A DNA stretch of 64,000 nucleotides from Macrostomum lignano (lineage: Eukaryota): NCBI GenBank assembly GCA_002269645.1, contig NIVC01000758.1:384993-448992 (forward strand), written 5' to 3'. Shown here one piece after another: positions 4,930 through 59,332 of the stretch. The translations under genes were made by a program, and so were the position numbers. Numbering within the stretch: the stretch's first letter is position 1; every line of letters starts with the position of its first letter. Under the pieces are notes generated by a model that was given only the letters and a program-made list of their open reading frames with translations, was not told the origin of the DNA and did no database searches.

Positions 4930-7900
4930 ATGGCACCCAGCGCATCGAAGCTCGTTCTCAGCGGCGTCACTTTCGTTCGGGCGCATCAGCGCGGCGTTGC
5001 GGTGACCGCCGGGGCCTTGCTCATGTCGCTGCACCTGCGCAAGCTGCTCCGCATGCTGACTGGCAGGCGGCAGAAACGCGACAGAGGCGGCGGCGGCGGC
5101 GGCGGCAAAGACGGCGCAGACGGCAGTCAGGCTGACGAATCGTCGAAAGCCACAGTCGACTTGGCCTTCATTCGTTCCCTGATTCGCCTGGTGCGAATCT
5201 GCGTGCCCTCCCTGCTGAGCCGGGAGTTCGGCATCCTGCTGCTGCACACGACCTCCCTTGTCACCAGGACTTTCCTGTCTGTCTATGTGGCCAAGCTGGA
5301 CGGCCGGATTGTGAAAGCCATCGTGCAGCGGAATGTACTGCGGTTCGTGCTGCAGATCGCCAAGTGGCTGCTGCTGGCCCTGCCCGCCACCTTTGTCAAT
5401 TCTTTGATCCGCTTTCTGGAGAGCCAGCTGGCGTTGGCGCTCAGAACTCGGCTGGTGATGCACTGCTACCAGGAGTACTTCAAGGATCAGACCTACTATA
5501 AGGTGAGGCCGCGAGACTGCGAATTCAGCGGCTGCAAGCCGTCTTATGGGGGTTCAAGTACCCGTTAGATAGGGCCAGGCATTCCATTAGTCAGTGGGAG
5601 ACCTCATTAGACAGTTAGAGACACCCCATTAGACAGTTGGAGACACACCATTAGACAGTTGGAGACACCCCATTAGACAGTTGGAGACACACCATTAGAC
5701 AGTTGGAGACACACCATTAGACAGTTGGAGACACCCCATTAGACAGTTGGAGTCTGGAGACACTATTAGACAGTTGGAGACACACCATTAGACAGTTGGA
5801 GACACACCATTAGACAGTTGGAGACACACCATTAGACAGTTGGAGACACACCATTAGACAGTTGGAGACACACCATTAGACAGTTGGAGACACCCCATTA
5901 GACAGTTGGAGTCTGGAGACACTATTAGACAGTTGGAGACACACCATTAGACAGTTGGAGACACACCATTAGACAGTTGGAGACACCCCATTAGACAGTT
6001 TGAGACACCCCATTAGACAGTTGGAGACACACCATTAGACAGTTGGAGACACCCCATTAGACAGTTGGAGTCTGGAGACACTATTAGACAGTTGGAGACA
6101 CACCATTAGACAGTTGGAGACACACCATTAGACAGTTGGAGACACACCATTAGACAGTTGGAGACACCCCATTAGACAGTTGGAGACACCCCATTAGACA
6201 GTTGGAGACACCCCATTAGACAGTTGGAGACACCCCATTAGACAGTTGGAGACACACCATTAGACAGTTGGAGTCTGGAGACACTATTAGACAGTTGGAG
6301 ACACACCATTAGACAGTTGGAGACACACCATTAGACAGTTGGAGACACACCATTAGACAGTTGGAAACACACCATTAGACAGTTGGAGACACCCCATTAG
6401 ACAGTTGGAGACACACCATTAGACAGTTGGAATCTGGAGACACTATTAGACAGTTGGAGACACACCATTAGACAGTTGAAGACACACCATTAGACAGTTG
6501 GAGACACCCCATTAGACAGTTGGAGACACCCCATTAGACAGTTGGAGACACCCCATTAGACAGTTGGAGACACACCATTAGACAGTTGGAGACACCCCAT
6601 TAGACAGTTGAAGTCTGGAGACACTATTAGACAGTTGGAGACACACCATTAGACAGTTGGAGACACACCATTAGACAGTTGGAGACACACCATTAGACAG
6701 TTGGAGACACCCCATTAGACAGTTGGAGACACACCATTAGACAGTTGGAGACACCCCATTAGACAGTTGGAGTCTGGAGACACTATTAGACAGTTGGAGA
6801 CACACCATTAGACAGTTGGAGACACACCATTAGACAGTTGGAGACACACCATTAGACAGTTGGAGACACCCCATTAGACAGTTGGAGACACCCCATTAGA
6901 CAGTTGGAGACACCCCATTAGACAGTTGGAGACACCCCATTAGACAGTTGGAGACACACCATTAGACAGTTGGAGACACCCCATTAGACAGTTGGAGACA
7001 CACCATTAGACAGTTGGAGACACCCCATTAGACAGTTGAAGTCTGGAGACACTATTAGACAGTTGGAGACACCCCATTAGACAGTTGAAGTCTGGAGACA
7101 CTATTAGACAGTTGGAGACACCCCATTAGACAGTTGGAGACACACCATTAGACAGTTGGAGACACACCATTAGACAGTTGGAGACACCCCATTAGACAGT
7201 TGGAGACACACCATTAGACAGTTGGGAGACACCATTAGACAGTTTGAGACACTATTAGACAGTTGGAGACACCCTAATAGACAGTGGAAGACACCCATTA
7301 GAAAGTGGGGGACACTGCCATTAGACAGTGGGAGACACCCCTCTTAAACAGCCACGGGGCAGCCAAACCCCCATCAGTGAGGTGGCAGGGCCCCATGCCA
7401 GCCCCAAGTTCCCCAGTAAACTGAAAGCCAGCATCGCCAACCCCATCCCCGCACAGGTGGGCAACCTGGACAGCCGGCTGCAGAACGCTGACCAGTGCCT
7501 GACTGAGGACATCTCGCAGTTCACGGGCAGCCTGGCGCACCTGTACTCACACCTGACCAAGCCCATCCTGGACGTGGCCATCATGTCCTACACTCTGTAC
7601 AGCCTGGCCCGCAGCCGTGGCGCCTCCAGCAAGTTTCCCAGCGTGTTCGCCACGGCCGTCATTCTGTTCACTGGCGAGGTTCTGCGCACCGTGTCGCCCA
7701 AGTTCGGCCGTCTGGTTGCCGAGGAGGCCAGGCGGAAGGGCCGCCTCCGCTTCATTCACAGCCGGGTGATCGCCTGCGCAGAGGAGATCGCCTTCTACGG
7801 AGGCCACAAGCTGGAGCGTCGGGTGCTCGAGGACTCCTACGAGTCCTTGGCCCGACAGTCCAGTCGGATCTTCCGCCAGCGCCTCTGGTACGTCATGCTG

Positions 7901-10174
7901 GAGCAGTTCCTCATGAAGTACGTGTGGAGCGCAGCCGGCATGACCATGGTGGCCGTGCCCATCCTCACCGCCACGGGGCAGCGGCCCGATGGCAGCCTGG
8001 TGGATGAGGACCAGGACGGCGGAGTGTCCGAGCGGACTCAGGTGGGAATTGGGAATGAGCTTTAGACCGGTATACCGATTCATTACCCTCTGTTAACTCC
8101 GATAGGTCCATTCCCTTCACCTAATCTGATTTCCTGCATCTAATCTGATTCCCTGCATCTCTAATCTAATTCCCCGCATGTCTAATCTTATTCCCTGCAT
8201 CTCTAATCTAATTCCCTGCTTCTCTAACCTGAATCCCTGCATCTCTAACCTGAATCCCTGCATCTCTAACCTGAATCCCTGCATCTCTAATCTGAATCCC
8301 TGCATCTCTAACCTGAATCCCTTTATCTCTAATCTGAATCCCTGCATCTCTAATCTGAATCCCTGCATCTCTAATCTGAATCCCTGCATCTCTAACCTGA
8401 ATCTTTTTATCTCTAACCTGAATCCCTGCATCTCTAATCTGAATCCCTGCACCCTACGGTGCATTCAAATCCTCACTCTGGTCCCAATTCGATTCCCCGA
8501 ATCGCCGGCCCCACAGGCCTTCACCACGGCCCGCAATCTGCTTGTCAGCGCCGCCGACGCCATCGAGCGCATCATGACGTCATACAAGGAGATCACGGAG
8601 CTCTCGGGCTACACCAGCCGCGTCTCCTCAATGCTGAATGTGTTCAGCGATGTGCAGAACGGCAAGTTCGTCCGGCCCGGCATGCGGCACACCCGAGGCC
8701 AGGTCACCGAGAGCGCCGACTGCATCGAGCTGTGCGACGTGCCCATCGTTACGCCGAGCGGCGACGTTGTGGCGGAGTCGCTCAGCCTTCGGCTGGACCG
8801 GGGCACCCATCTGCTGATCACTGGTGAGCCAATCAGATCTGAGGAATGAGCAGTACGTTAGTTCAAGGAGCGGGTCAGTCCAGTGTAATTCAAAGTCAAT
8901 AATCATCATCATTCACTCCACCTCATCGCTTGCAAGCTGCACATTGAAGCTCTTCGTTTAAAATCGTTTTTTGTGCACCCATCGGAAACCTTCACCAACT
9001 GTATTGTGGTCTCGAATCGCAGAACTTTTTAGCCAATGCTCGCTTAGTTTTTCCTATGGAGGGAACACTGATCAACAGGGGAACGTAATTTTTAGACAAC
9101 ACCTGGCTTGAGAGAATCAATCTTAAGCTGTAAGCTTTGAGGTGTAGTGTAAGCTTTAGTTTTAACCTTAGCTTGAGGTTTGACTTAAGCTTTGGAATAT
9201 GTACTTTAAGCTTCGGGAAATGTACTTTAAGCTTCGGGAAATGTACTTTAAGCTTCGAGATATGTACTTTAAGCTTCGTGATGTGTACTTTATGCTTCTG
9301 GATTTTCTTTAAGCTTCGGGTATGAAGAAGGTTCTGGATGTACTGATGTGGACTTTAAGATTTGGTGTGGACTTTAAGCTTTGGACTGTATTTCGACTTG
9401 TTTTTTTATACTATTGATTTAAAGGTTTTTGGTACTCGTTAATGGTTTCTTTGCTTTATGTTAAAATGCATATTTTTGTTAATGTACTTTTTTATTGTGC
9501 TTTTATACTTTTTGTTTGTTTACTTCTATTTAATGTATAAGTACAATACTGTCGAACCCGCAGGCCCCAACGGCTGCGGCAAGTCCTCTCTCTTCCGCAT
9601 TCTGTCCGGCCTCTGGCCAGTCTACGGCGGGCGCCTGGTGAAGCCGCCGGTGCAAACTCTCTATTATATTCCGCAGCGGCCCTATCTCAGCATTGGCGAC
9701 CTGCGCGAACAGGTGACGTACCCGGACACAGCCGAGCAGCGCCGAGCCAAAGGCGTCACAGACGGCCAACTGCGCGCGGTGCTGGAGGCCGCGCACCTCG
9801 GCTACCTGCTCGAGCGGGAGGGCGGCTGGACGGCCGTGCGAGAGTGGGCCGACGTGCTCAGCGGCGGCGAGAAGCAGCGGCTCGGCATGGCGCGCCTGCT
9901 GTACCACCGGCCGCTCTTTGCCCTGCTGGACGAGTGCACCTCCGCCGTCAGCATCGACGTCGAGGCGAAGATCTACCAGGCCGCCAAGGACGCCGGCATC
10001 ACCCTGCTGACCATCACGCACCGGCCCTCTCTGTGGCCGTTTCACGACCGCGTGCTCAAGTTCGACGGAGCCGGCGCCTGGTCTCTGGAGGAGATGCCCG
10101 CCGCTGCTGCCACCGCCGCCGCCGCTGCCGCGTCCACCGCCTCGGCAGTTGAGGCGGCGACGAGCGAAGCATAA
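4930..10174 (+). CDS. ABCD1/ABCD2: Peroxisomal ABC half-transporter, ABCD1/ABCD2 (ALDP)-like, 4 exons, ~691 aa
   Basis: Exons 4930-5502, 7457-8041, 8517-8823, 9564-10174 with GT-AG and consistent phases 0,0,1. Motifs: EAA-like EEIAFYGG, Walker A GPNGCGKS split by intron 3, signature LSGGEKQR, Walker [11 protein letters not shown], and [18 protein letters not shown] typical of ABCD1/2. Confidence 0.95.
5586..7335 (+). repeat. 22-bp minisatellite (GAGACACACCATTAGACAGTTG) filling ABCD intron 1
   Basis: Direct inspection: ~75-80 units, with periodic longer variants containing GTCTGGAG. Confidence 0.97.
8120..8452 (+). repeat. 21-bp minisatellite (ATCTCTAACCTGAATCCCTGC) in ABCD intron 2
   Basis: Direct inspection; produces the CISNLNP repeat ORF. 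Confidence 0.95.
9190..9300 (+). repeat. Short 21-bp tandem repeat (GTACTTTAAGCTTCGGGAAAT) in ABCD intron 3
   Basis: About 4-5 degenerate units visible. Confidence 0.8.
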
Positions 10175-10202: not shown

Positions 10203-10558
10203 TTGTGATGTGGGATTTCATGGATCTGAGGTCTTTGTGATGTGGGATTTCATGGATCTGAGGTCTTTGTGATGTGGGATTTCATGGATCTGAGGTCTTT
10301 GTGATGTGGAATTTCATGGATCTGAGGTCTTGAGATGTGAGATTTCACGGATCTGAGGTTTTGATATGTGGGATTTCATGGATCTGAGGTCTTGATATGT
10401 GGGATTTCATGGATCTGAGGTCTTGATATGTGGGATTTCATGGATCTGAGGTCTTGATATGTGGGATTTCATGGATCTGAGGTCTTGATATGTGGGATTT
10501 CATGGATCTGAGGTCTTGATATGTAGGATTTCATGGATCTGAGGTCTTGATATGTGGG
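10203..10558 (+). repeat. 31-32-bp tandem repeat downstream of the ABCD stop codon
   Basis: Unit GTGGGATTTCATGGATCTGAGGTCTT(T)G(TG)AT, about 11 copies. Confidence 0.93.
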
Positions 10559-11309
10559 AAGATTCGGATTTTCGGGTGCTGTATGTCTCATTTCCATATC
10601 TATTTTTATAGTTATGAGTAGCTCATGCAGTTAATATTGACTTTGGTTAGCCATTGGATGTCCTGCTTATTTCATACTCTGTTCGATTTACTTCATCTTC
10701 TCCACTTCAAAAAAATGCAAATTCTCTTTATTCAATTCCGCCTGTTGTGTTTTGGCATTGCGGCCCTGACTGACAGTTTGCTGTCCCTCTGCTGCCTACT
10801 CGTAGTAGTATTAGAAATCTGCAGTCCCAGTCTAAAGCCGAGCTTGCTTTCACAATCTGCTGTAAAGCAGAGAAGTGGTTTTCAAATTTAATTCGGTAGT
10901 TTTTGTGTTCTTTCTAGCCGTGCCGATGAAATCAATCGGTTTATTAATTATCAAGTATTTTCCCTGGGCGTCCTTTGCTACTCAATATCTTAACAGAAGC
11001 AAGTAGTGCGAATTAGCGAATCAATTTTTCTGAAACTTTCCGTTCTCTCTTTGAAATATGTGCATGTATACAATAAGCTACGCAAAATGATGTGCAATGC
11101 GTATTGTGTTGTGTGCGGATTTTATTTGAGTAAAAATATTTCAGCTATGGTATTAGATTTCCTATTAGCATTCTTATTTGCGATCGTTGCTTTAAAATAA
11201 AAGCTATCAAGCTTTACTTACTGTAATGAGAGTCATTTATTAAACACAATGTTTAAAGTACAGGCTTGGATTTATTTCTGCTCTGGGCTTTGTGAGTCTT
11301 ATCAATCAG

Positions 11310-45350: not shown

Positions 45351-47787
45351 ATTGAAGCAATGTTGCTTAGGGAGACCCATTGGTCTTGCCTGCAGGGCAG
45401 TCTTTCTCACTAGCAGTAAGGAAGAAATCAGCTCATCCTATGTCCCTAAGGTACTAGGCAAGCAGTGGGATGCTCTCAGGCTTGCAAATTTTGGGGAAAA
45501 CTAAGTTTGGCCCAGGTAAACAAGCCTGGCCCAGGTGAAAACCAGGCTGTGGTAGCGTGGGTCTGCTCAGTTGCTCCACTCAGTGTAATGTACAGTGCAG
45601 GTGTACACCTGCACGCGCACGTGTGATTGGCTTACGCTTTGTCAGACAACCTTTATTGTTGGCCAGCTATATTAAATACAAGCTCTCTGCCTTTGGGGGG
45701 GTCTTTCCCCCGAAGTGGAGTTTTCACAGTGGCGACGAGACTGAAACGACCCTGCGCAAATGAGTAGTGCAAGTTCACTAGGGCTTGTCGGCCCATACGA
45801 AGAAGGCTCTGAGCCGTGGCATATGTACCAAGCAAGGTTAGAGCAATATTTTGTTGCCAATGACGTCACTGAGGAAGCGAAAAAGCGAGCGATTCTGCTG
45901 AGTTCATGCGGCAAGAAAGTCTTCCATCTGGCCTTCAGTCTTCTGTCTCCTGCACAGCCATCAGCCAAGAGCTACACCGAAATTTGTGAAGCACTTAAGA
46001 GCCATTTCGAGCCTGAGGAGTCCGAGATCGTCCATCGTTACCGATTCTACACTAGAAATCGCAGGGAAGGTGAGGGCGTCGCGGACTTCGTCGCAGACCT
46101 CCGAGACCTGGCTCGCGACTGCAAGTTCGGCGACAGCCTGACTTCGATGCTTCGCGACAGGCTGGTGCTGGGAATCAACAACGACAGCGCTCAGCGGCGG
46201 CTGCTGGCGGAGCCCGTTCTCACTCTAGCGAAGGCACTGCTGAATGTGCATGTGGTGACGTCAGCGACCTCAGCTGTCACCATCCAAAAACTCCGCTCCA
46301 GCTTCGCGACGCACGGGTTGCCAGATGTGCTGGTGTCGGACAATGGGCCCAACTTGGTCAGCGAGGAGATGTCCGACTTTCTGCGGAAGAACGGCATTCA
46401 GCACGTGCGCGTTGCTCCCTATCATCCGGCGTCCAACGGCCTGGCGGAACGAGCTGTCCAGACGCTGAAGCGGTCCCTTGAGAAGCAGCGCGACGGCTAC
46501 TTGGAGGATAAGGTCGCCCGGTTCCTGCTGAGCTACCGGGTCACTCCGCATGCGACAACTGGTGTGGCTCCCTGCGAACTCCTGATGGGACGGCGCCTGT
46601 GCACGTTGCTAGATCGAGCTCGGCCAGACCTGGGAGCAAGAGTACAGCGTAAGCAAAGTCAGCAAAAAGAGCACCACGACTGCAAAGCTCGGTTCCGGAC
46701 CTTCGAGACTGGAGACGCTGTACTGGCCAGAGACTTTGGAGCCACCGTTAAGTCGGTGGAAGCCGGCGCGAGTTTTCGGTGCCGCCGGTCCGGCCTCCTA
46801 CCTGTGTGGCTTCGATGGCGACGACTGAGTGGTGCGGCGGCACGTTGACCATGTCCGCGGTGGTCCTGAGCAGCCGCGGCCTACAGGAGCTGGCGTGACA
46901 GACGGTGCCACCGACGCCAAGGCCGCACCTGAGCCGGAAGCTGCGATGCCGGCCGTGGACGAGCCGCCAAACCTGGCTGCTCCTGGAGACCCTGAGATCG
47001 ACGGGTCTCTGCGCCGATCGTCGCGAGTTCGACGTCCCCCGGAGCGCCTGAGCTACGGGTGACGTCATCTGTGAAAGAGACTGTTTTGATTGACTGTAGT
47101 GTTCGGACGTTTAAATTTGGATTTTGAACTTTGTTATGGTTATGATTTATTTTCCTTATTCTGTTGTGTTGTTTGTGTCGTCTTGCGATCCCTGATCCCC
47201 ATGTAGATGGGGAGGGATGTGGTAGCGTGGGTCTGCTCAGTTGCTCCGCTCAGTGTAATGTACAGTGCAGGTGTACACCTGCACGCGCACGTGTGATTGG
47301 CTTACGCTTTGTCAGACAACCTTTATTGTTGGCCAGCTATATTAAATACAAGCTCTCTGCCTTTGGGGGGGGGTCTTTCCCCCGAAGTGGAGTTTTCACA
47401 CAGACAGTAGCAGATAAAGTGGTCAGTGTTTTCACTGCCTGAGGGGCAGAAGGCACCACTCTGGGTACCTGGCCCTGAAAGAAGCAGTGGCAAGAGAAGC
47501 ATCTATGCCCAGAGAAGGTCATGCTAACTGCTCTGAAGTCTCTGCAGTTAAGCCTGAGGAAGGCTCTATGCAGGAAGGAAGAGTGACAGGGGATTGTCTG
47601 CGATTCCAGGTGTTGTGCTATCCACAGAGATGCTTAAAATCAGCCCAGCACTTAACATGGGAATTATCACCAATGTGGAACTGGGGCCGCTGTGCCTGGC
47701 CCCAGTAATGTGCCAGCAAAGCCAGCCTTGGCCAGCTGGTCAGCATGCTCATTGCCAAGGAAACCAGTGTGGCCTGGGAAAGGAAAA
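45351..47787 (-). mobile_element. Decayed 3' fragment of an RNase H-containing LINE, split by the LTR element
   Basis: PGHTGFLGNEHADQLAKAG (~47770-47715) is the RNase H WxPGHxGxxGNExAD motif. SGHRCFSCH follows, then a CCHC-type tail FCPSGSENTDHFICYC|LVFTWARLVYLG that reads through once the LTR element and one TSD are removed. Confidence 0.65.
45548..47400 (+). mobile_element. Internally deleted Ty3/Gypsy LTR retrotransposon (1853 bp) with in-frame Gag-integrase fusion ORF
   Basis: LTRs 45548-45728 and 47218-47400 (TG…CA; one substitution plus G7 vs G9). PBS-like TGGCGACGAG, polypurine tract before the 3' LTR, 5-bp TSD CAGGC/CAGAC. ORF 45760-46848 joins Gag N-domain to the integrase core (SDNGP…HPASNGLAER). 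Confidence 0.93.
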
Positions 47788-48549: not shown

Positions 48550-51500
48550 ATGCTTACACAATCATATCTGCTTCAAGAAACATATGTTGGCTCCAATGAA
48601 CCAACAGAATATGTTCTTACCAATCAGAAGCTGGTCACCAAAAGCAAAAAATTAAAGCTTGATAGCTTAGTTAGCACTGCTAAGGTAAGCTGTTAAACAA
48701 CTCAATCAATAATTCTCTGTTGTTTCAAATCCATTTGACTTCCTTGATTTCTGCAAAATTTAAGCAAATCCTACTTTAATTCTCCCTAATTCAGTAACCC
48801 AAGTCTAAGCCGATCCTTTTCTTATGCACCAAATCTCAGCAGCGTTCCACAACAAGCTCAAGCCAATTCCCGTAACCCGCCGCAGGACGTCTTCCTGCCG
48901 CAGGGCTACCCGGACTCGGTGTCCGCTGACTACCTGACCTACCAGATTTGGGACACCGCCCAGGCCTTCTGCAGCTCCCTTACCAGCGCCCTGGCCAGCC
49001 GGGCCGTCCTGACCGGCTACGGTGTCGGCGACCAGGGCGCATCGGTGGCGGCCGCCACCCTCGCCTGGCTGCTGCGCGACGGCTGCGGCATGGTGGGCCG
49101 CATCCTGTTCGCCTGGCTGTATGGCACCGCTCTGGACTGGGACTGCAAGCGCTACCGGCTGCTGGCGGATGTGCTGAACGACTTGGCCATCCTGATACAG
49201 CTGCTCTGCCCGCTGGCCGGGCCGCCCGGCTCGCCCGCTGTAGTCGCCGTCCTGTGCATCGCCTCCGTGACGCTAGCGCTGGTCACCGTCTGCGGCGGCG
49301 CCACCAGAGCCGCGTTTACTATGCACCAGGTGTGTTTACTATGCACCAGGTGTGTTTACTATGCACCAGGTGTGTTTACTATGCATCAGGTGTGTTTACT
49401 ATGCACCAGGTGTGTTTACTATGCATCAGGTGTGTTTACTATGCATCAGGTGTGTTTACTATGCACCAGGTGTGTTTACTGTGCACCAGGTGTGTTTACT
49501 ATGCACCAGGTGTGTTTACTATACATCAAGTGTGTTTACTATGCACCAGGTGTGTTTACTATGCACCAGGTGTGTTTACTATGCACCAGGTGTGTTTACT
49601 ATGCATCAGGTGTGTTTACTATGCACCAGGTGTGTTTACTATGCATCAGATGTGTTTACTATGCATCAGGTGTGTTTACTATGCACCAGGTGTGTTTACT
49701 ATGCATCAGGTGTGTTTACTATGCACCAGGTGTGTTTACTATGCACCAGGTGTGTTTACTATACATCAGGTGTGTTTACTATGCACCAGGTGTGTTTACT
49801 ATGCATCAGGTGTGTTTACTATGCACCAGGTGTGTTTACTATGCACCAGGTGTGTTTACTATGCACCAGGTGTGTTTACTATGCACCAGGTGTGTTTACC
49901 ATGCACCAGGTGTGTTTACTATGCACCAGGTGTGTTTACTATGCACCAGGTGTGTTTACTATACATCAAGTGTGTTTACTATGCACCAGGTGTGTTTACT
50001 ATGCACCAGGTGTGTTTACTATGCACCAGGTGTGTTTACTATGCACCAGGTGTGTTTACTATGCACCAGGTGTGTTTACTATGCACCAGGTGTGTTTACT
50101 ATGCACCAGGTGTGTTTACTATGCACCAGGTGTGTTTACTATGCAACAGGTGTGTTTACTATGCACCAGGTGTGTTTACTATACATCAGGTGTGTTTACT
50201 ATGCACCAGGTGTGTTTACTATGCACCAGGTGTGTTTACTATGCATCAGGTGTGTTTACTATGCACCAGGTGTGTTTACTATGCACCAGGTGTGTTTACT
50301 ATGCACCAGGTGTGTTTACTATGCACCAGGTGTGTTTACCATGCACCAGGTGTGTTTACTATGCACCAGGTGTGTTTACTATGCACCAGGTGTGTTTACT
50401 ATACATCAAGTGTGTTTACTATGCACCAGGTGTGTTTACTATGCACCAGGTGTGTTTACTATGCACCAGGTGTGTTTACTATGCACCAGGTGTGTTTACT
50501 ATGCACCAGGTGTGTTTACTATGCACCAGGTGTGTTTACTATGCACCAGGTGTGTTTACTATGCACCAGGTGTGTTTACTATGCAACAGGTGTGTTTACT
50601 ATGCACCAGGTGTGTTTACTATACATCAGGTGTGTTTACTATGCACCAGGTGTGTTTACTATGCACCAGGTGTGTTTACTATGCACCAGGTGTGTTTACT
50701 ATGCACCAGGTGTGTTTACTATACATCAGGTGTGTTTACTATGCATCAGGTGTGTTTACTATGCACCAGGTGTGTTTACTATGCATCAGGTGTGTTTACT
50801 ATGGGTGTGTCCGTAGCCAATGGGTTTCACAGGGACATTCACGAGATGTCGCGTCGAGGTGTCGTGGCGGTTTCGTGTCCCATGGTCGATAACTGGGTGG
50901 GGAATTAGAGTTAGCAGCCTAAGGCCAAGGAAGGAACTCAAGCCTCCCGGGGTGTCGGCCAGTCTGTTAAATACGCTGTCAGTTAGATACAATTATTGTA
51001 AAACAGGAGCCGGTAGGGTGCCTGCGATGTCAGCGAATGGTGGGAGGCATCGGCTTGAGAATTCTTCAACACGATTTAACATCTTAAGCCTGGTTCACAT
51101 TTCCGCAAATAGCTCCGTGCTTCAAACTAATAGCTGTTCGCCGCCGCTACCAGCTGATTGCGAACGCTACTATCCGTGCGCAGCTCTACTATCCGAAAGT
51201 CCGCCGCTCCTGGCGGACTCTAATAGTGATTTTATTTGGTTCTATTCATTAGAACTAGAAAGGAGAATATAACTTTCAATTTTATGCATGGCAAACGAAA
51301 CCGAAATGCACCCCATTCACATAAACACTCACAACTCCTTGCTTTGAGTTGTCCGCTTCTGCAGCATGGATGGCAGGGGTAGGCGTACAGTAAATTTAAA
51401 CGATTGTGTCATTGCTCACTGCTCACTGTACAATGAGTACAGACAATTTCTTGCGCAACCAGACAGGAGCACAGCTGGAGGCTATATGAAACGAATAGAA

Positions 51501-54500
51501 CCATGCTCTATTCTTCACCCCAAACTCCACACAACTTGATACCTGGAAATGTCCGACTTGTCACACGAGACTCCGGAGTTGGATCCAACTCTGATAGATG
51601 AAGTTGCCAAACATGAAGTTGTCTACAACATCTCAAGCCGAAAATTCAAGGATCAGCAGGCGAAAACCAGCGCATGGAATCAGATCGCTGAGACTTTGGG
51701 CAAGGATTCAACTTGGTGCCTCAAGCGGTTTCAAGGTCTCAAGCGTAACTAGTTTGTTTTCCGGCGTGGAAGCAAGCTTCCGAGTGGGAGTGCGGTCAAG
51801 CCTACTCCCAGGCGGTTGGGAATATACAGTCGCATGAACTTCCTGGACAAGTGTGACTACATTGGCGATACTACCTCAAATGTGCCTCCGCCCACACCAG
51901 AACTTGTAGCTGTGGGATCTGCTGGACCCTCTCAGCAGGCAACCTCGGTCAATGATGAGGCGCAACAGTCCAGTCGAGCAGAGGCACAGGCTGCAACAAC
52001 TGACCCCAGTGAGGCGTCAATGCGAGAGTTTGCGGAAAGTGCGCCAAAGAAGGCCAGAAAGGCAACTGCAACAGAAGCATCAAAGCTGGATACTGCCCTC
52101 AGCCAGTTGACTCAGCAACTGACAAAAGATGAGGACGAATATGCCTCCTTTGGCCAAGCAATTGGACAGGCCATCCGTCGGCTTCCAACGCAAATTGAGC
52201 GCGACTATGCCATGGCGCACCTGCGGAGCGAGTTGTTCACAATCCAACTCCACGGCCTGCCCCGAAGCGTTGCCATCCGAACTGAGCCTGCCGCTGATGC
52301 CGCTGCTGGATCAGCTTCCTTCGACGACATGCTCGCTCCATCATATCCACGGTCACACCTCCCAATGACTCCTAGAAGTGCGTGAGATAAAAGCGATAGA
52401 GTGCAATATTTTGCAAACTAGAAGCAAATCTTTTTTCCTTTTTCATGACCAGATTGCATTGTGCGTGTCAGAGAGCAAGTGCAGAGATCGAGAGAGACAG
52501 AAAATATAATGAAATCATAAATGAATATGTTGAAAATATTGTCTCCACAGTCTTGTCAATTTATTTACGAGTTTGGATTACTTTCTGTTGTAGCATTGTA
52601 CTTTCTCGCCGCCTTGTTTGAAATTTCCACAAAATTAGCTCATAAATTCACGTTCTGTATGCGAAATAAACATGCGGAATAAATTAATGATTCATCAACA
52701 GTATTATCGATTATCATCAGTAGGTACATGTATCATTGCGCTCTGCATGGAATGGCACCATTGGGGCTGACGAAGAAGTCCCTCAGCAGCATCTGTTGCT
52801 CCCGAGCGGAGGCGCTGCTTCGATTTCCACCCAGATTCCGGGCTGGCATTACCCCGACGCTGCCTGTCACGGTGGATCTCCATGAACCCTCCTGTACCTG
52901 GCCGGTGGGCAGTTCCTGGTCAACACTTCCAGGTGGCATGTAGGACCGAGCTGCTGTAATGTTGGCCTCGTCCTCTATTCGCATGAAGTTATGCAGTACG
53001 AATGCGCACCGAATAAAGGCCTCAACGTGATCGATTCTCGCTATGACAGGCCGCAGGAAGAGTCGCTAGCGAGTCACCAGGATTCCAAACGCATTCTCAA
53101 TTGTGCGTCTTGCTCGAGACAGCCGGTAGTTGAACACTTGCGTCTTGTAGTCCAATGGTACCATTCCGCCGCGCCCAGGGAATGGGCGCATGAGATAATT
53201 CTTCAGCGGGAAAGCCTCATCACCGACAATTGCAAATGGCATGACGAGGCTGCTGCCAGAAATGCAGGAAGGCTCCGGGACTTTCACCGATCCAGACTCC
53301 AATCCAGCGTACAAGGCTGAACGTGAGAAGACTCCAGCGTCTCCTCTCCCTGCGCTGCCACTCTCTATGTACGTGAAGATGTAGTTACTGTCGCACATGG
53401 CGAGTACCAGTGAGCTGAACTGTTGCTTGTAATTGAAGTACTGGGAGCCGGTGTTTCTTGGACAATGAACCTTGAAATGCTTGCCGTCAATTGCACCGAG
53501 GCAGTTCGGAAAATGCCACTTTTCCCAGAATCCACCAGCGATTGCTTTCCATTCTTCTGCAGATGCAGGAAACTTTAGATATGTTGACGCCAGCTTGTCG
53601 TAGATGGCAATCGCAGTCTCGAACGACCCCTGACACAGTAGAGCGTCCTCGGCCAAATCGAAACGACAAGTCGGCTTGGCTGCAACCCGAAGCCAGGTAG
53701 CAAAGCGTCATCATTAGCTTCTCCTCTGCCGGAACGGCCTCTCTTCTTGCACATGGCCTGGAGAGTTTGGTTGCAACCAGTGAAAGCAGATGCTCAAACC
53801 GAGCCGGGCGCATGCGCATATACTTGAAGTACATCTCCGAGTCTCTATCTCGCAGATGTGGGATCAATCCGGCAAACTCGCCAAGCTCTTCTCTTCGTTG
53901 ATGACTCGGTCTCCGCCACCATCGCCTAGGGCGGCGGCCTTGCCTGATCAGCCTACGATGTTGCAGTATCGTTACGATTGCCAGTAGCAGTAGCTTCTTG
54001 GCTCGTGAAAGCATGTTTGAAATCTGAAAGCTGGTCACGGCTTTCTGGTCAAGATTTCTTAGATTGAAAACGCCCTGTCCGAAGCACAGATAGGGCTAGC
54101 ACTAGACTGAATTACTTTATATACTCGTAACAGTGGCCAAGGGTCAAATATTGCCTATTATCTTCGCGGGTTAAATTGAACTGCATGGCGATGCATCTAT
54201 TTGAGGGCGATAGTAGCACCCGCTAGTAGTGGTCGCGCTGAGCTAGTAGATTTCTGAAAATCAGCTATTAGCTGTGAGCGTCAGCTATTTGCGGAAATGT
54301 GAACCAGGCTTTAGAGGTTATTGTCAAAAATTGCATTGTTCAAGCCTGCTACAATTACAATCTTAATCTTCAATTTTAATCTCCGGATTCGTCTCCTCAA
54401 TTCCCCAGGCCCGCCAGCACAACATGGCGGACGTGTCGGCGAAGGACGCATCCCAGGAGACGCTGGTGAACCTGGTGGGGCTGGTAGTCAACCTGACCTT

Positions 54501-55116
54501 CGTGCCGCTCATCACTGGCCCGGTGGCCGTCCCAGTCTTCATCATTTTCACCTCCGGTCATATATTTGGCAATTGGTGCGCTGTCCGCTCCGTTGCCATG
54601 GAAACGCTGAACCCCAGCCGGCTTCACCTGGTGGTTGTCAGCTTTGTGGCCAGTGGCGGCCGCGCCTGCTCCGGGGTCGCCGAGGTGAACCAGTCCGAGC
54701 CGCTGCTCCGCTCCTGCGCCGCGCCGCTCCGCCTCGGCTGCCCACTGAGCGCCCCTGCCGCCGCGCTGCCTGCCGACCGCCTCGTCGACGGCCTTCGCCA
54801 GCAGCGGCACCGGCGGCTCGCCGTCTTCACCGGAGCGTCGAGCTACTATGCGGTTCTGGCCGAGGACGCGACCTCCGCTGATCAGCTGCTGGCCGTCTTC
54901 CAGTGCGAGCTGATCCACCTGGCCAGGACCCGGCCGAAACTGTTTGACGCCGTCGGCGGCTGCTCCGAGCTTCGGGCTGGCGATGCGGCCGCTGCCGCCA
55001 CGGCCGAGCGGCTGATGCCGGACTTTCTGGGCGCGCTGTCAAAGGCAGGCTGGAGCACCGAGCCGCTGCTACTGGGCGCCGGGCAGCACCGCCTGACCTG
55101 GTCCAAGTCCTTCTAA
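48550..55116 (+). CDS. RUSF1: RUS family member 1 (DUF647/C16orf58)-like, copy 1, 3 exons, ~428 aa
   Basis: Exons 48550-48684, 48886-49329, 54409-55116, all phase 0. Motifs VFLPQGYPDSVSADYLTYQIWD, LRDGCGMVGRILFA, GGATRAA, MADVSAKDASQETLVNL, HIFGNWCAVRSVAMETLN. Confidence 0.9.
49315..50802 (+). repeat. 20-bp minisatellite made of the RUSF1 exon 2 / intron 2 junction (TTTACTATGCACCAG|GTGTG)
   Basis: About 74 units; the first unit is the true exon end and donor at 49329/49330. Confidence 0.97.
51549..52385 (+). pseudogene. Harbinger MADF/Myb-SANT DNA-binding protein with premature stop
   Basis: LIDEV…VVYN…KDQQAKTSAWNQIAETLG…WCLKRF (MADF-like). ORFs 51549-51752 and 51816-52385 share one frame, separated by TAG at 51750-51752. 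Confidence 0.8.
52733..54015 (-). pseudogene. Harbinger (HARBI1-like) DDE transposase with a frameshift and a nonsense codon
   Basis: LCYLASG…, FPNCLGAIDGKH, YFNYK, GDEAFPL, FNYRLSRARRTIENAFGIL. Frameshift near 53620 (probable GA dinucleotide loss); TAG at 53066-53068 where W is expected. Confidence 0.92.
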
Positions 55117-55224
55117 ACTGGCACAGCCCCACTGGCTCCCTATTTTGATTTACCACTGTATTGATGCGATGTTATTTGAGATCCCTTTTACATGCATCAC
55201 GATTTTCTGTCCAATGTGTAAGTC

Positions 55225-55480
55225 AGAAGATTTGGATTCCCCTGTCTTAGGATTGGAATTCCCTTATCGCAAGATTGGGATTCCCTATCGCAGGATTAGG
55301 ATTCCCTATCGCAGGATTGGGATTCCTCTATCGCAGGATTGGGATTCCCCTATCGCAGGATTGGGATTCCCCTATCGCAGGATTGTGATTCCCCTATGTC
55401 TTAGGATTGGAATTCCCTTATCGCAGGATTGGGATTCCCCTATCGCAGGATTAGGATTCCCGTCATGGGATTCCCAGTCT
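55225..55480 (+). repeat. 22-bp GGGATTCCCC-containing repeat 3' of RUSF1 copy 1
   Basis: Unit CGCAGGATTGGGATTCCCCTAT, about 10 copies. Confidence 0.88.
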
Positions 55481-55894
55481 CAAGCTTCCTACTCTAACTG
55501 TTAAATTCATACTCGTATCGCTTTTGATTTCGCACACAAGTGCGCATGGGATTCAAAAAATTACTACAAGGACTGTTAGAAAATTTATTGTTACTGTTAT
55601 TGCTGTTATTCACTATTATCGTTTTCGAGTTTCATTAATTATCAGAAAATTTTGTGCTGAATATTCTTATCGTTTTTACCATTTTTGCGTGAATATTACT
55701 TGAGCAGATTAGGAAATTTTTTAGTCCTAAATTTTGATTGTACAGCCACGCGCCTTACCATTTTACTGTTGGCTTTTGGATTTCCACCTTTTCTGACTGC
55801 CGCAACACAACAGCATTTGCTGCCTGCATGCTTTCTCTGCTGCAGATCTTTATTAAGTTCAGGAAGCTTTTCGTCTTGCTTTGTCGTGCTTAGA

Positions 55895-56562
55895 TAGACC
55901 TACAGGTAAATTAGGTAGAGCTGTAGGCAATCTAGGTAGAGCTGTAGGCAGTTTAGGTAGAGCTGTAGGCAGTTTAGGTAGAGCTGTAGGCAGTTTAGGT
56001 AGAACTGTAGGCAGTTTAGGTAGAGCTGTAGGCAGTTTAGATAGAGCTGTAGGCAGTTTAGGTAGAGCTGTAGGCAGTTTAGGTAGAGCTGTAGGCAGTT
56101 TAGGTAGAGCTGTAGGCAGTTTAGGTAGAACTGTAGTTACTTTAGGTAGAGCTGTAGGCAGTTTAGGTAGAGCTGTAGGCAGTTTAGATAGAGCTGTAGG
56201 CAGTTTAGGTAGAGCTGTAGGCAGTTTAGATAGAGCTGTAGGCAGTTTAGGTAGAGCTGTAGGCAGTTTAGGTAGAGCTGTAGGCAGTTTAGGTAGAGCT
56301 GTAGGCAGTTTAGGTAGAGCTGTAGGCAGTTTAGGTAGAGCTGTAGGCAGTTTAGGTAGAGCTGTAGGCAGTTTAGGTAGAGCTGTAGTTAGTTTAGGTA
56401 GAGCTGTAGTTAGTTTAGGTAGAGCTGTAGTTAGTTTAGGTAGAGCTGTAGTTAGTTTAGGTAGAGCTGTAGTTAGTTTAGGTAGAGCTGTAGTTAGTTT
56501 AGGTAGAGCTGTAGGCAGTTTAGGTAGAGCTGTAGGCAGTTTAGATAGAGTTGTAGGTAGTT
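55895..56562 (+). repeat. 21-bp minisatellite (GTAGAGCTGTAGGCAGTTTAG)
   Basis: About 31 units, ending ~165 bp upstream of the RUSF1 copy 2 ATG. Confidence 0.96.
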
Positions 56563-56727
56563 AATGATGTACAAATCATACTTGTAAATTTAAATTATAC
56601 TTGCTACCTGTGTTAGTATAAGTAGTATGCATTATAGCATATCAAAAAGTGGCTACAATTTTCAGCAAGCAATACTTGCATTCGAAGCTGATTCCCAGTG
56701 GCCTGGTAGATCCCTGCTGCAACTGCG

Positions 56728-59332
56728 ATGACTGCGGAGCCGCTGTTACTAAAGGAAGTTACTGACAGCTCCAGTGAAGCAACAGAATATGTTCTCACGC
56801 AGCAGAATTTGCTCATCAAAGGCAAAAAACGAAAGTTTGACGGCTTTGTTAGCACCGCCAAGGTACGAGATTAAGATTGCTGTTTGTAGTAGGCTGCTCT
56901 TCCCCCGAATCCCCTGATTCCAGTTTCTACCTGAGTTAATACCCTGTTCGCTGTTCTTAATATATTTCTGAGCTAATCCTCTGATCCCAATTTCCGCCTG
57001 AGCTAATCCTCTGATCCCAATTTCCACCTAAACTAATCCTCTGATCCCAGTTTCCACCTGAACAAATCCTCTGATCCCAGTTTCCACCTGAACAAATCCT
57101 CTGATCCCAGTTTCCACCTGAACAAATCCTCTGATCCCAGTTTCCACCTGAACAAATCCTCTGATCCCAGTTTCCACCTGAACAAATCCTCTGATCCCAG
57201 TTTCCACCTGAACAAATCCTCTGATCCCAGTTTCCACCTGAACAAATCTCTGATCCCAGTTTCCACCTGAACTAATCCTCTGATCCCAATTTCCACCTGA
57301 ACAAATCCTCTGATCCCAGTTTCCACCTGAACAAATCCTCTGATCCCAATTTCCACCTGAACAAATCCTCTGATCCCAATTTCCACCTGAACAAATCCTC
57401 TGATCCCAGTTTCCACCTGAACAAATCCTCTGATCCCAATTTCCACCTGAACATCCTCTGATCCCAATCTCCACCTGAGCTAATCCTCTGATCCCAATCT
57501 CCACCTGAGCTAATCCTCTGATCCCAACTTCCACGAGCTAATCCCTGATCCCTATTCCCAACTGAGCTAATTCTGGCCTTAATTCCAATCCACCTGATCA
57601 AGCCATCCTTGCCATCCACCAGGTCATCAGAGCGCAACCTCGTCTCTCCCTCATCCCGATCTTCAGGACGTCTTCCTGCCGCAGGGCTACCCGGACTCGG
57701 TGTCTGCGGACTACCTGACCTACCAGATGTGGGACACCGCCCAGGCCTTCTGCTCCTCTGTCACAGGCGCCCTGGCCGGCCGGGCCGTCCTGACCGGCTA
57801 CGGTGTCGGCGACCAGGGCGCCTCGGTGGCGGCCGCCACCCTCGCCTGGCTGCTGCGCGACGGCTGCGGCATGGTGGGCCGCATCCTGTTCGCCTGGCTG
57901 TACGGCACCGCTCTGGACTGGGACTGCAAGCGCTACCGGCTGCTGGCGGATGTGCTGAACGACTTGGCCATCCTGATGCAGCTGCTCTGCCCGCTGGCCG
58001 GGCCGCCCGGCTCGCCTACCGTGGCTGCCGTCCTGTGCGTCGCCTCCGTGCTGCTGTCGCTGGTTGGAGTTTGCGGCGGCGCCACCAGGGCGGCGCTCAC
58101 GATGCACCAGGTGTGCGCCCAGGGTGCTGGCTCTGATGACTGAAGATCTCAGATGGAGAAATTGACACATTTTCCTCGATTCCCGATAATCACCTGATCC
58201 CCTGATAAGAATCACCTGATCCCCTGATGAGAATCACCTGATCCCCTGATGAGAATCACATATCCCCTGATGAAAATCACCTGATCCCCTGATGAGAATC
58301 ACCTGATCCCCTGATGAGAATCATCTGATCCCCTGATGAGAATCACCTGATCCCCTGATGAGAATCGCCTGATCCCCTGATGAGAATCGCCTGATCCCCT
58401 GATGAGAATCACCTGATCCCCTGATGAGAATCGCCTGATCCCCTGATGAGAATCACCTGATCCCCTGATGAGAATCGCCTGATCCCCTGATGAGAATAGC
58501 CTGATCCCTTGATGAGAATCGCCTCATCCTATGATGAGAATCGCGAATAAATCTGTAAATTAATGTAGCGTAAAAATCGACCAGGTAAACTGCGGGCTCA
58601 CCCAAGTCCCCTCCCGCTCCCCAGGCGCGCAGGCACAACATGGCGGACGTGTCGGCTAAGGACTCATCCCAGGAGACGCTGGTGAACCTGTTCGCCCTGC
58701 TGTTCAATTTGGCCTTCGTGCCGCTCATCACTGGCGGAGCAGCCGTGCTCGCCTACCTGCTGTTCACCTTTGGCCACCTGTACTTTAATTGGCGCGCCGT
58801 CCGCTCCGTTGCCATGGAAACGCTGAACCCCAGCCGGCTTCACCTGGTGGTTGTCAGCTTCGTGGCCAGTGGCGGCCGCGCCTGCTCCGGGGTCGCCGAG
58901 GTGAACCAGTCCGAGCCGCTGCTCCGCTCCTGCGCCGCGCCGCTCCGCCTCGGCTGCCCACTGAGCGCCCCTGCCGCCGCGCTGCCTGCCGACCGCCTCG
59001 TCGACGGCCTTCGCCAGCAGCGGCACCGGCGGCTCGCCGTCTTCACCGGAGCGTCGAGCTACTATGTGGTTCTGGCCGAGGACGCGACCTCCGCTGATCA
59101 GCTGCTGGCCGTCTTCCAGTGCGAGCTGATCCACCTGGCCAGGACCCGGCCGAAACTGTTTGACGCCGTCGGCGGCTGCTCCGAGCTTCGGGCTGGCGAT
59201 GCGGCCGCTGCCGCCACGGCCGAGCGGCTGATGCCGGACTTTCTGGGCGCGCTGTCAAAGGCAGGCTGGAGCACCGAGCCGCTGCTACTGGGCGCCGGGC
59301 AGCACCGCCTTGTCTGGTCCAAGTCCGCTTGA
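56728..59332 (+). CDS. RUSF1: RUS family member 1 (DUF647)-like, copy 2, 3 exons, ~428 aa
   Basis: Exons 56728-56862, 57667-58110, 58625-59332; exon lengths (135, 444, 708) and phases identical to copy 1. Confidence 0.92.
56965..57560 (+). repeat. 30-bp minisatellite in RUSF1 copy 2 intron 1
   Basis: Unit CTGATCCCAGTTTCCACCTGAACAAATCCT, about 19 copies. Confidence 0.95.
58185..58545 (+). repeat. 22-bp minisatellite in RUSF1 copy 2 intron 2
   Basis: Unit ATCACCTGATCCCCTGATGAGA, about 15 copies. Confidence 0.94.

What the first reader, a model, noticed from the sequence alone, without database searches (positions are those of the whole stretch)
49315..50802. About 74 tandem copies of a splice donor: the exon/intron junction itself amplified, stop-free in all three frames
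Seen: the 20-bp unit is the last 15 nt of RUSF1 exon 2 plus GTGTG of the intron. The paralog has the same junction (ATGCACCAG|GTGTG) once and no array, so the array arose in place. Most units retain CAG|GTGTGT, and all three plus-strand frames are open through the array. Inference: every third donor is in frame and would add a Cys-rich 20-aa unit (VCLLCTRCVYYAPGVFTMHQ), giving a ladder of isoforms, while other donors would shift the frame and trigger NMD. The array could be a tunable splice rheostat, a U1 snRNP sponge, or a substrate for recursive splicing. If only the first donor is used, it is a striking natural test of donor choice.
Basis: partly seen in the sequence, partly recalled or inferred. 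Interest (0 to 1): 0.8.

Follow-up and report, generated by a model that had tools for sequence, protein, structure and literature searches.

The report
Intron minisatellite that repeats a splice donor
In the flatworm Macrostomum lignano, a 20-base repeat that began on the exon 2/intron 2 boundary of a duplicated RUSF1 gene has copied its splice donor about 73 times; this is a large new example of a kind known from human genes such as F7, IFI6 and CBS, and the annotated transcripts use only the first donor.

Summary
A 20-bp x 74.5 tandem array (49314-50803; 95% matches, no indels) starts on the exon 2/intron 2 junction of a RUSF1 (PF04884) gene. It repeats CAG|GTGTGT 70 times, plus 3 CAA|GT. 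The tandem paralog 8 kb downstream has the junction once.

The window is the end of Macrostomum lignano contig NIVC01000758.1. Two other contigs of the same assembly carry the array at the same site with 56 and 89 copies. Their ends match and they differ by internal block duplications, so this is a real, length-variable minisatellite that arose in place.

It is ordinary for its setting. Tandem repeats cover 30% of the window, and neighbouring introns are 69-90% minisatellite. Being open in all three frames is shared by 5 of 22 large arrays.

All four database gene models join the first donor to exon 3. The join falls inside the most conserved motif of the family, so in-frame 20-aa inserts would probably be harmful.

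Minisatellites whose first unit spans an exon-intron boundary are already described (F7, IFI6, CBS, LMNB2, PDGF). In those genes the most upstream donor dominates. The isoform ladder, rheostat and U1 sponge ideas have no support here, but no reads were examined. Verdict: new member of a known kind, of modest interest.

The parts
49314..50803 (+). 20-bp minisatellite, 74 full units plus a terminal partial unit. Its first unit is the 3' end of exon 2 plus the first intron bases.
   Evidence: TRF, unit table, variant-repeat map.
49327..49335 (+). Authentic, most upstream 5' splice site CAG|GTGTGT. The intron starts at 49330. This is the donor used in all gene models.
   Evidence: Pfam continuity 156/157; models cross as FTMHQ|ARQHN.
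49350..50790 (+). In-register reiterated pseudo-donors every 20 nt: 69 CAG|GTGTGT, 3 CAA|GTGTGT and 1 dead CAG|ATGTGT. 24 are in frame; 24 give a stop 58 nt into exon 3 and 24 give a stop 470 nt into exon 3.
50794..50808 (+). Terminal 15-nt unit with CACCA deleted, giving TGG|GTGTGT. Specific to this contig; the other two contigs end with a full unit followed by GTCCGTAGCC.
48550..48684 (+). RUSF1 copy 1, exon 1 (ATG at 48550).
   Evidence: P0123 sequence and gene range; sequence.
48886..49329 (+). RUSF1 copy 1, exon 2 (148 codons, PF04884 positions 13-156).
49330..54408 (+). Copy 1 intron 2 (5079 nt): the array, then unique sequence, then a transposon remnant.
53066..54038 (-). PIF/Harbinger-type transposase remnant (DDE_Tnp_4 and HTH_Tnp_4, in two frames) inside intron 2. 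Shared by all three contigs.
54409..55116 (+). RUSF1 copy 1, exon 3, including the stop codon (PF04884 positions 157-240 plus PF24160).
56728..59332 (+). RUSF1 copy 2 (exons 56728-56862, 57667-58110, 58625-59332). It has a single CAG|GTGTGC junction at 58108-58116. Its introns hold their own 30-bp and 22-bp minisatellites, which stay 77-105 nt away from the splice sites.

Best explanation
This is a neutral or slightly harmful intronic minisatellite (VNTR) in copy 1 of a tandemly duplicated RUSF1 gene of Macrostomum lignano.

Origin. After the gene duplication, a 20-bp stretch spanning the exon 2 donor was duplicated. It has only 2 nt (GT) of flanking microhomology. The copies then expanded by slippage or unequal exchange to 56-89 units. 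Because the first unit still carries the intact exon end and donor, the normal mRNA can still be made, so the array is tolerated.

Splicing. The splicing machinery uses the most upstream donor, the one next to the real exon. The roughly 73 downstream copies are silent pseudo-sites inside a 5-kb intron. At most the next one or two are used at a low level, as in the human precedents.

Shown: the anatomy, the in-place origin, the length variation, the abundance of similar arrays in this genome, and first-donor joins in all models. Inferred: that the pseudo-sites are silent, and the reason why (5'-to-3', first-come selection or exon definition).
For: Array and junction.

In-place origin:
- Homology to copy 2 covers the exons only and stops 5 nt into the intron.
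- Copy 2 has a single junction.
- In L001 and L003 the array ends as (unit)n|GTCCGTAGCC.

Real and variable:
- The same array sits at the same site in three contigs of GCA_002269645.1, with 74.5, 89.1 and 56.1 copies.
- The window and L003 share their first 47 units; the window has an extra 22-unit block.
- L001 shares its first 6 and last ~15 units with L003.
- Two neighbouring arrays vary in the same way: 31/43/38 copies and 20.1/23.7/21.1 copies.

Ordinary setting:
- Tandem repeats cover 29.9% of the window in 37 arrays, and simple plus tandem repeats make up 15% of the genome (PMC5730564).
- The ABCD-gene intron 5503-7457 is 90% array.
- The two copy 2 introns are 74% and 69% array.

First donor:
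- All four protein models cross as FTMHQ|ARQHN.
- The GenBank annotation was built from RNA-seq and a de novo transcriptome.
- Pfam positions 156/157 abut with no gap.

Tolerance: copy 1 is the derived copy. It carries the odd residue at three sites that are invariant in 12 orthologs and copy 2 (G79S, G179T, L189F).

Precedent: F7, LMNB2 and PDGF use only the authentic donor; IFI6 and CBS also use the next two (PMC1557585).
Against: - I saw no RNA reads. First-donor use rests on database gene models.
- The GenBank 'coregenes' set removed transcripts that overlap repeat annotations and alternative transcripts with an identical CDS. Minor isoforms that use array donors would probably have been filtered out, so their absence proves little.
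- In vitro work with two strong identical 5' splice sites finds splicing almost wholly at the intron-proximal site (PMC3413131). That predicts the opposite choice.
- The precedents are all mammalian; the rules of donor choice in flatworms are untested.
- 70 of 74 units keep an intact donor. This fits a young, homogenised array but would also fit selection on the motif.
Confidence: 0.8

Rival explanations
1. Isoform ladder or splice rheostat. Many array donors are used. In-frame ones add 20-aa Cys-rich units, out-of-frame ones yield truncated or unstable mRNAs, and array length tunes the output of functional copy 1.
For: - 73 in-register GT sites; 70 identical donors counting the authentic one.
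- 25 are in frame, and the array has no stops.
- IFI6 and CBS do use the first two pseudo-sites.
- Array length differs among the three contigs.
- The annotation filter could hide such isoforms.
Against: - No model contains repeat-derived residues.
- Inserts would split the invariant GGATRAA.T.HQ|A..NMADVSAKD block, which has no indel in 14 orthologs.
- Even in the human precedents only sites 1-3 are used.
- Stop-free frames are common among arrays here, 5 of 22.
- The premature stops lie in the exon that carries the normal stop codon.
Confidence: 0.1
2. U1 snRNP recruitment platform or sponge. The reiterated donors bind U1 without splicing. This could suppress premature cleavage and polyadenylation in the 5-kb transposon-bearing intron, retain the pre-mRNA, or titrate U1.
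For: - There is a dense run of sites that match 7 of 9 positions of the consensus CAG|GTAAGT (the U1 pairing rule is textbook knowledge).
- The intron is long and holds a transposon remnant.
Against: - There is no evidence of binding.
- Sites only 20 nt apart cannot all be occupied at once.
- One ordinary gene cannot titrate an abundant snRNP (general knowledge).
- Neighbouring introns carry equally large arrays with no donor motif, so the array needs no such purpose.
- The units can pair with each other across the donor.
Confidence: 0.04
3. Recursive (ratchet) splicing. Each unit's AG|GT acts as both acceptor and donor, so the array is removed stepwise and a donor is regenerated each time.
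For: Each unit has TTTAC (a yUnAy-like branch motif), a pyrimidine-leaning TTTACTATGCACC, and then CAG|GTGTGT (read directly from the sequence).
Against: - The pyrimidine tract is weak.
- Known recursive sites serve very long introns, whereas this array is 1.5 kb at the 5' end of a 5-kb intron.
- The mechanism would leave no trace in mRNA and offers no evident benefit.
- There are no data for it.
Confidence: 0.03
4. Copy 1 is a decaying duplicate. The array, the transposon insertion and the unusual substitutions are symptoms of lost constraint, and splicing at this junction may already be impaired.
For: - Copy 1 carries the deviant residue at three sites that are invariant in 12 orthologs and copy 2, and at R196Q.
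- 34 non-synonymous against 25 synonymous codon differences between the copies.
- The intron has grown from 514 nt to 5079 nt and holds a transposon remnant.
Against: - The reading frame is intact in all three contigs.
- Pfam scores are almost equal to those of copy 2: 197.7 vs 198.2 bits for exon 2 and 72.8 vs 75.2 for exon 3.
- Transcript-based models exist for copy 1.
- This reading is compatible with the main explanation rather than exclusive of it.
Confidence: 0.12
5. Assembly artefact: the array, or its length, was produced by long-read assembly.
For: - The assembly is repeat-rich and redundant.
- The 15-nt terminal unit is unique to this contig and could be a consensus error.
Against: Three separate contigs carry the array at the same site. 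Their variant-unit orders are related but distinct, and their flanks differ by 1-3%.
Confidence: 0.02

Closest known systems
Human F7 intron 7 VNTR (37 bp x 5-9), whose first monomer spans the exon 7/IVS7 boundary (Borensztajn et al. 2006, PMC1557585)
   Same: - The first unit of the minisatellite contains the exon end and the donor.
- The authentic donor is followed by identical pseudo-donors.
- Length is polymorphic.
- Only the most upstream site appears in the mature mRNA (here, at the level of annotation).
   Different: - The unit is 20 bp, not 37 bp.
- There are about 73 pseudo-sites, not 4-8.
- The unit takes 15 nt of exon rather than 4.
- The donor is stronger (CAG|GTGTGT vs TGG|GTGGGT).
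- The host is a flatworm.
- No experimental splicing data exist.
Human IFI6 (6-16) intron 2 minisatellite: authentic donor plus 25 pseudo-sites (as summarised in PMC1557585)
   Same: - A short unit that starts at the exon 2 donor.
- Many reiterated donors.
- In-frame use of downstream units is possible.
   Different: - In IFI6 the first two pseudo-sites are used constitutively.
- Here no such isoform is annotated, and only every third site is in frame.
Human CBS intron 13 VNTR (15-20 repeats), LMNB2 (100 bp x 10-15) and PDGF intron 4 (81 bp x 16-18) (as summarised in PMC1557585)
   Same: They are boundary-spanning minisatellites. Either only the authentic donor is used (LMNB2, PDGF) or it plus two pseudo-sites (CBS).
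   Different: They have longer units and fewer copies, and they are vertebrate genes.
Ordinary intronic minisatellites of M. lignano (for example 5584-7341, 56968-57565 and 58188-58542 in this window)
   Same: - Similar unit sizes (20-30 bp) and copy numbers.
- The same purity, 94-97% matches.
- The same between-contig length variation.
- The same intronic location.
   Different: Those arrays begin 77-105 nt downstream of the donor and carry no splice site. This one starts on the junction itself.

Membership tests
Boundary-spanning minisatellite (F7 / IFI6 / CBS type) | Head-to-tail array with a unit of about 10-100 bp | tested here: met
   Period 20, 74.5 copies, 95% matches, no indels.
Boundary-spanning minisatellite (F7 / IFI6 / CBS type) | The first monomer contains the exon-intron boundary, so the authentic donor is reiterated in the intron | tested here: met
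   Exon 2 ends at 49329 (Pfam position 156, with 157 in exon 3). Paralog homology reaches 49334. There are 70 CAG|GTGTGT sites in register.
Boundary-spanning minisatellite (F7 / IFI6 / CBS type) | Copy number varies between alleles (VNTR) | tested here: met
   56.1, 74.5 and 89.1 copies in three contigs of one assembly, with related variant maps. These are haplotype or homeolog copies from one laboratory line, not a population sample.
Boundary-spanning minisatellite (F7 / IFI6 / CBS type) | The authentic (most upstream) donor is used in mature mRNA | tested here: met
   All four database models cross as FTMHQ|ARQHN, and the GenBank annotation is transcript-derived. No reads were inspected.
Boundary-spanning minisatellite (F7 / IFI6 / CBS type) | Downstream pseudo-sites are silent or used only at the first one or two | not testable with these tools
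   This needs RNA reads or RT-PCR. The annotation filter removed transcripts that overlap repeats. A junction-specific protein search found nothing and failed its positive control.
RUSF1 / RUS (DUF647, PF04884) protein family | UVB_sens_prot domain plus UVB_sens_C domain | tested here: met
   Exon 2 scores 197.7 bits on PF04884. Exon 3 scores 72.8 bits on PF04884 and 34.6 bits on PF24160. Identity to animal RUSF1 proteins is 40-46% over 98-100% of the query for nearly all listed hits.
Recursive splice site (ratchet point) | A strong polypyrimidine tract and AG placed directly against a consensus donor, inside a very long intron, with lariat or saw-tooth RNA evidence | tested here: inconclusive
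   AG|GT is juxtaposed in every unit, but the tract is weak and the intron is only 5 kb. RNA evidence is not available.
U1 decoy or sponge RNA | An abundant transcript with many U1-bound, unspliced 5' splice-site motifs | not testable with these tools
   Only the motif count is known. There are no expression or binding data.

The most novel reading that the evidence does not exclude
A measurable share of copy 1 pre-mRNAs splice from downstream array donors, two thirds of them out of frame. The polymorphic array length (56, 74 or 89 units) would then set how much functional copy 1 mRNA each allele yields: a length-coded expression dial on a redundant paralog, with far more sites than any described case.
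Probability: 0.1. Interest if true: 0.5.

Novelty: new member of a known kind. Interest (0 to 1): 0.25.

Why it matters
With about 73 identical pseudo-donors spaced 20 nt apart, this has about three times as many reiterated donors as IFI6 (25 pseudo-sites), the largest of the cases I found described. It lies in a flatworm for which transgenesis is established (PMC5730564; RNAi by soaking also works, from my own knowledge). It could serve as a non-mammalian test of two opposing rules: the most upstream donor wins (F7, in vivo) or the intron-proximal donor wins (in vitro competition). Since 15% of this genome is simple or tandem repeat and its introns are packed with minisatellites, many more boundary-spanning arrays probably exist. 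A genome-wide count would show how strongly selection keeps arrays away from splice sites. As a single locus it does not change current understanding.

Tried and rejected
1. A junction-specific protein search (exon 2 tail + one 20-aa unit + exon 3 head), meant to find transcript-derived fragments in Logan RNA-seq assemblies. It gave 19 candidates and 3 distant hits and did not recover P0002, which shares two long exact stretches. It is uninformative.
2. The full-length search found no Logan-derived M. lignano product. The only close hits were the NCBI and UniProt models.
3. RNA structure as a reason for donor choice. Adjacent units form 7-bp hairpins (GGUGUGU / AUGCACC) that cover every donor, the first included. 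The z-score is only -2.07, so this does not single out the first site.
4. 'Open in all three frames' as a sign of coding or selection. Rejected: it is one condition, not three, and 5 of 22 arrays here meet it.
5. Position-specific conservation of the donor within units. Not pursued, because variants spread by block duplication and so are not independent events.
6. A literature search for Macrostomum plus minisatellite gave one paper holding both words, on G-quadruplex motifs, which I did not open.
7. Searches failed on frame or syntax errors and were repeated. One search failed on a missing file and was redone.
8. The phage, plasmid, E. coli, bacterial-genome and metagenome collections were not searched, because the sequence is from an animal.
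Full report
**What is there.** TRF reports one array at 49314-50803: period 20, 74.5 copies, 95% matches, no indels, consensus GTTTACTATGCACCAGGTGT. The 14-mer ATGCACCAGGTGTG, allowing one mismatch, occurs 67 times against 0.02 expected. Sixty-six of these are in the array and one is at 58102. Of the 74 full units, 51 are the consensus and the rest differ at one to three positions. In register there are 70 CAG|GTGTGT sites, 3 CAA|GTGTGT sites and 1 destroyed site (CAG|ATGTGT). A terminal 15-nt unit gives TGG|GTGTGT.

**The host gene.**
- The window is the last 64 kb of Macrostomum lignano contig NIVC01000758.1 (assembly GCA_002269645.1, Mlig_3_7). Locus L002 is 100% identical to it over 16.5 kb.
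- Two RUSF1 (PF04884/PF24160) genes of three exons each lie in tandem on the + strand.
  - Copy 1: exons 48550-48684, 48886-49329 and 54409-55116.
  - Copy 2: exons 56728-56862, 57667-58110 and 58625-59332.
- Exon 2 covers Pfam profile positions 13-156 and exon 3 starts at 157. The canonical join is therefore the first donor (intron from 49330) to 54409.
- The array begins 16 nt before the end of exon 2.

**Origin.**
- The two copies are alignable only over their exons, at 92-93% identity. The alignment stops 5 nt into intron 2, at 49334/58115.
- Copy 2 has the junction once (CAG|GTGTGC), followed by unrelated intron sequence.
- In the two other contigs the array ends as full units followed directly by GTCCGTAGCC. 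That is the pattern expected from a simple in-place duplication of 20 bp.
- So the array postdates the gene duplication and arose where it sits.

**Reality and dynamics.**
- Contigs NIVC01000108.1 (L001) and NIVC01000625.1 (L003) carry the same locus at 97-99% flank identity. The array is at the same site with 89.1 and 56.1 copies.
- Variant-unit maps show that the window and L003 are identical over the first 47 units. The window then has an extra block of 22 units, which appears as a 440-bp higher-order period.
- L001 shares the first 6 and last ~15 units with L003, and has its own internal duplication.
- This is standard minisatellite behaviour and argues against an assembly artefact.
- The DV1 line has extra large chromosomes and a redundant assembly, which explains the three copies (PMC5730564).
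- Two neighbouring arrays vary among the contigs in the same way: 31/43/38 copies and 20.1/23.7/21.1 copies.

**How special is it?**
- Tandem repeats cover 29.9% of the window in 37 arrays. Simple and tandem repeats make up 15% of the genome.
- Introns here are typically filled with minisatellites.
  - The ABCD-transporter intron 5503-7457 is 90% a 22-bp x 78 array. That array starts 81 nt after the donor and ends 116 nt before the acceptor.
  - Copy 2 intron 1 is 74% array and intron 2 is 69% array, the latter starting 77 nt after the donor.
- The copy 1 array differs only in touching the donor.
- 'Open in all three frames' is not three independent facts. With a period of 20, all frames read the same 60-nt cycle. 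Five of 22 large arrays in the window are stop-free in all three frames of one strand.

**Which donor is used?**
- Four independent database models cross the junction as ...GGATRAAFTMHQ|ARQHNMADVSAKD..., with no repeat-derived residues. They are PAA79613.1, PAA90546.1, PAA77222.1 (the window's own model) and UniProt A0A1I8G1J0.
- The GenBank annotation was built from RNA-seq (StringTie/TACO) and a BLAT-mapped de novo transcriptome. This gives indirect RNA support for transcription of copy 1 and for first-donor splicing.
- The caveat is that the submitted set excluded transcripts that overlap repeat annotations and alternative transcripts with an identical CDS. Minor array-donor isoforms could have been filtered out.
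- I could not obtain read-level or transcript-contig evidence.

**What other donors would give.**
- Using donor k inserts 20k nt. Twenty-five of the 73 GT sites (k = 0, 3, ... 72) are in frame and add VCLLCTRCVYYAPGVFTMHQ for every three units.
- Of the rest, 24 give a stop 58 nt into exon 3 and 24 give a stop 470 nt into exon 3.
- All these stops lie in the exon that carries the normal stop codon, so exon-junction-dependent NMD is not the obvious fate. This is an inference, and no UTR structure is known.
- The junction sits in the most conserved block of the family. G182-A188, T190, H192 and Q193 on one side, and A194, N198-D201 and S203-D206 on the other, are invariant in 14 animal RUSF1 proteins, with no indel. 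In-frame inserts there would most likely be damaging rather than a graded isoform series.

**State of copy 1.**
- Copy 1 is intact in all three contigs, and its Pfam scores match those of copy 2.
- It is nonetheless the derived copy. At sites where the copies differ in exons 2-3, copy 2 agrees with 12 orthologs at 17 sites and copy 1 at 8.
- Copy 1 alone departs from residues invariant in all 12 orthologs: G79S, G179T and L189F. It also carries R196Q. L189F (TTT) lies inside the repeat unit.
- Its intron 2 is 5079 nt against 514 nt in copy 2, and it holds a PIF/Harbinger remnant.
- A redundant, somewhat relaxed duplicate is a plausible place for such an array to be tolerated.

**Comparison with what is known.** Borensztajn et al. 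2006 (PMC1557585) describe this class: minisatellites whose first monomer spans an exon-intron boundary, so that the donor sequence is reiterated in the intron.
- In F7 (37 bp x 5-9), LMNB2 and PDGF, only the authentic donor is used.
- In IFI6 (25 pseudo-sites) and CBS, the first two pseudo-sites are also used.
- The F7 mutational work supports a 5'-to-3' rule in which the most upstream site wins and the downstream sites, though functional, do not compete.
- In contrast, in vitro substrates with two strong identical sites splice almost wholly at the intron-proximal site (PMC3413131).
- The M. lignano models agree with the upstream rule.
- The present case meets the structural criteria of the class. 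It differs mainly in scale (about 73 pseudo-sites) and host phylum.
- One paper holds both the words Macrostomum and minisatellite, a G-quadruplex survey that I did not open.

**Verdict.** The in-place origin is supported. The isoform ladder, rheostat, U1 sponge and recursive splicing readings are unsupported, though not excluded at low level. This is a new and unusually large member of a known kind, in a genome where such arrays are probably common. Interest is modest.

Noticed in passing
window 54409-55116 vs 58625-59332: Exon 3 of the two RUSF1 copies is a mosaic. Codons 149-206 differ at many sites, mostly non-synonymous. Codons 207-376 differ at only 2 of 170 codons. This suggests recent gene conversion of the 3' part between the tandem copies.
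   Followed up: partly
window 48550-59332; L001 10001-21435: The GenBank models PAA77222.1 (window) and PAA90546.1 (L001) span both paralogs and switch to copy 2 sequence near the C-terminus (ending ...WSKSA). UniProt A0A1I8G1J0 fuses copy 1 and copy 2 into 838 aa. These are probably mapping or prediction artefacts in the near-identical exon 3 tract, though read-through or polycistronic transcription is not excluded.
   Followed up: partly
window 4930-10171 (+): An ABCD-type (peroxisomal-like) ABC transporter gene (PF06472 and PF00005). At least one of its introns is almost entirely minisatellite: intron 5503-7457 is 90% a 22-bp x 78 array. More arrays lie between its later exons (8121-8451, 9131-9384, 10208-10559).
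   Followed up: partly
window 45760-46848 (+): A retrotransposon fragment with gag-like and integrase (rve) matches in one ORF, about 1.7 kb upstream of RUSF1 copy 1.
   Followed up: no
window 51816-52385 (+) and 53066-54038 (-): Inside copy 1 intron 2 there is a PIF/Harbinger transposase remnant, split between two frames. There is also a 189-aa ORF with no Pfam hit, which may be the element's second (DNA-binding) protein. The insertion is shared by all three contigs.
   Followed up: partly
window 49314-50803: The repeat unit is quasi-palindromic across the donor (AUGCACC-A-GGUGUGU). As RNA, adjacent units can form 7-bp hairpins with a 5-nt loop, or a long imperfect duplex. The z-score for 181 nt is only -2.07.
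   Followed up: partly
window 50794-50808: Only this contig has a final 15-nt unit lacking CACCA. It is either a haplotype-specific deletion or a consensus error of the long-read assembly.
   Followed up: no
window 5503-7457, 56863-57666, 58111-58624: In the three other introns examined, the arrays stop 77-116 nt short of both splice sites. This may reflect selection keeping the splice-site flanks free of repeats.
   Followed up: no
window 48550-48684 and 56728-56862 vs the downstream exons: Exon 1 of both RUSF1 copies looks AT-rich and diverges by about 20% between the copies, whereas exons 2-3 look GC-rich and diverge by 7-8%. Composition varies sharply across the window, from 28% to 68% GC per kb.
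   Followed up: no
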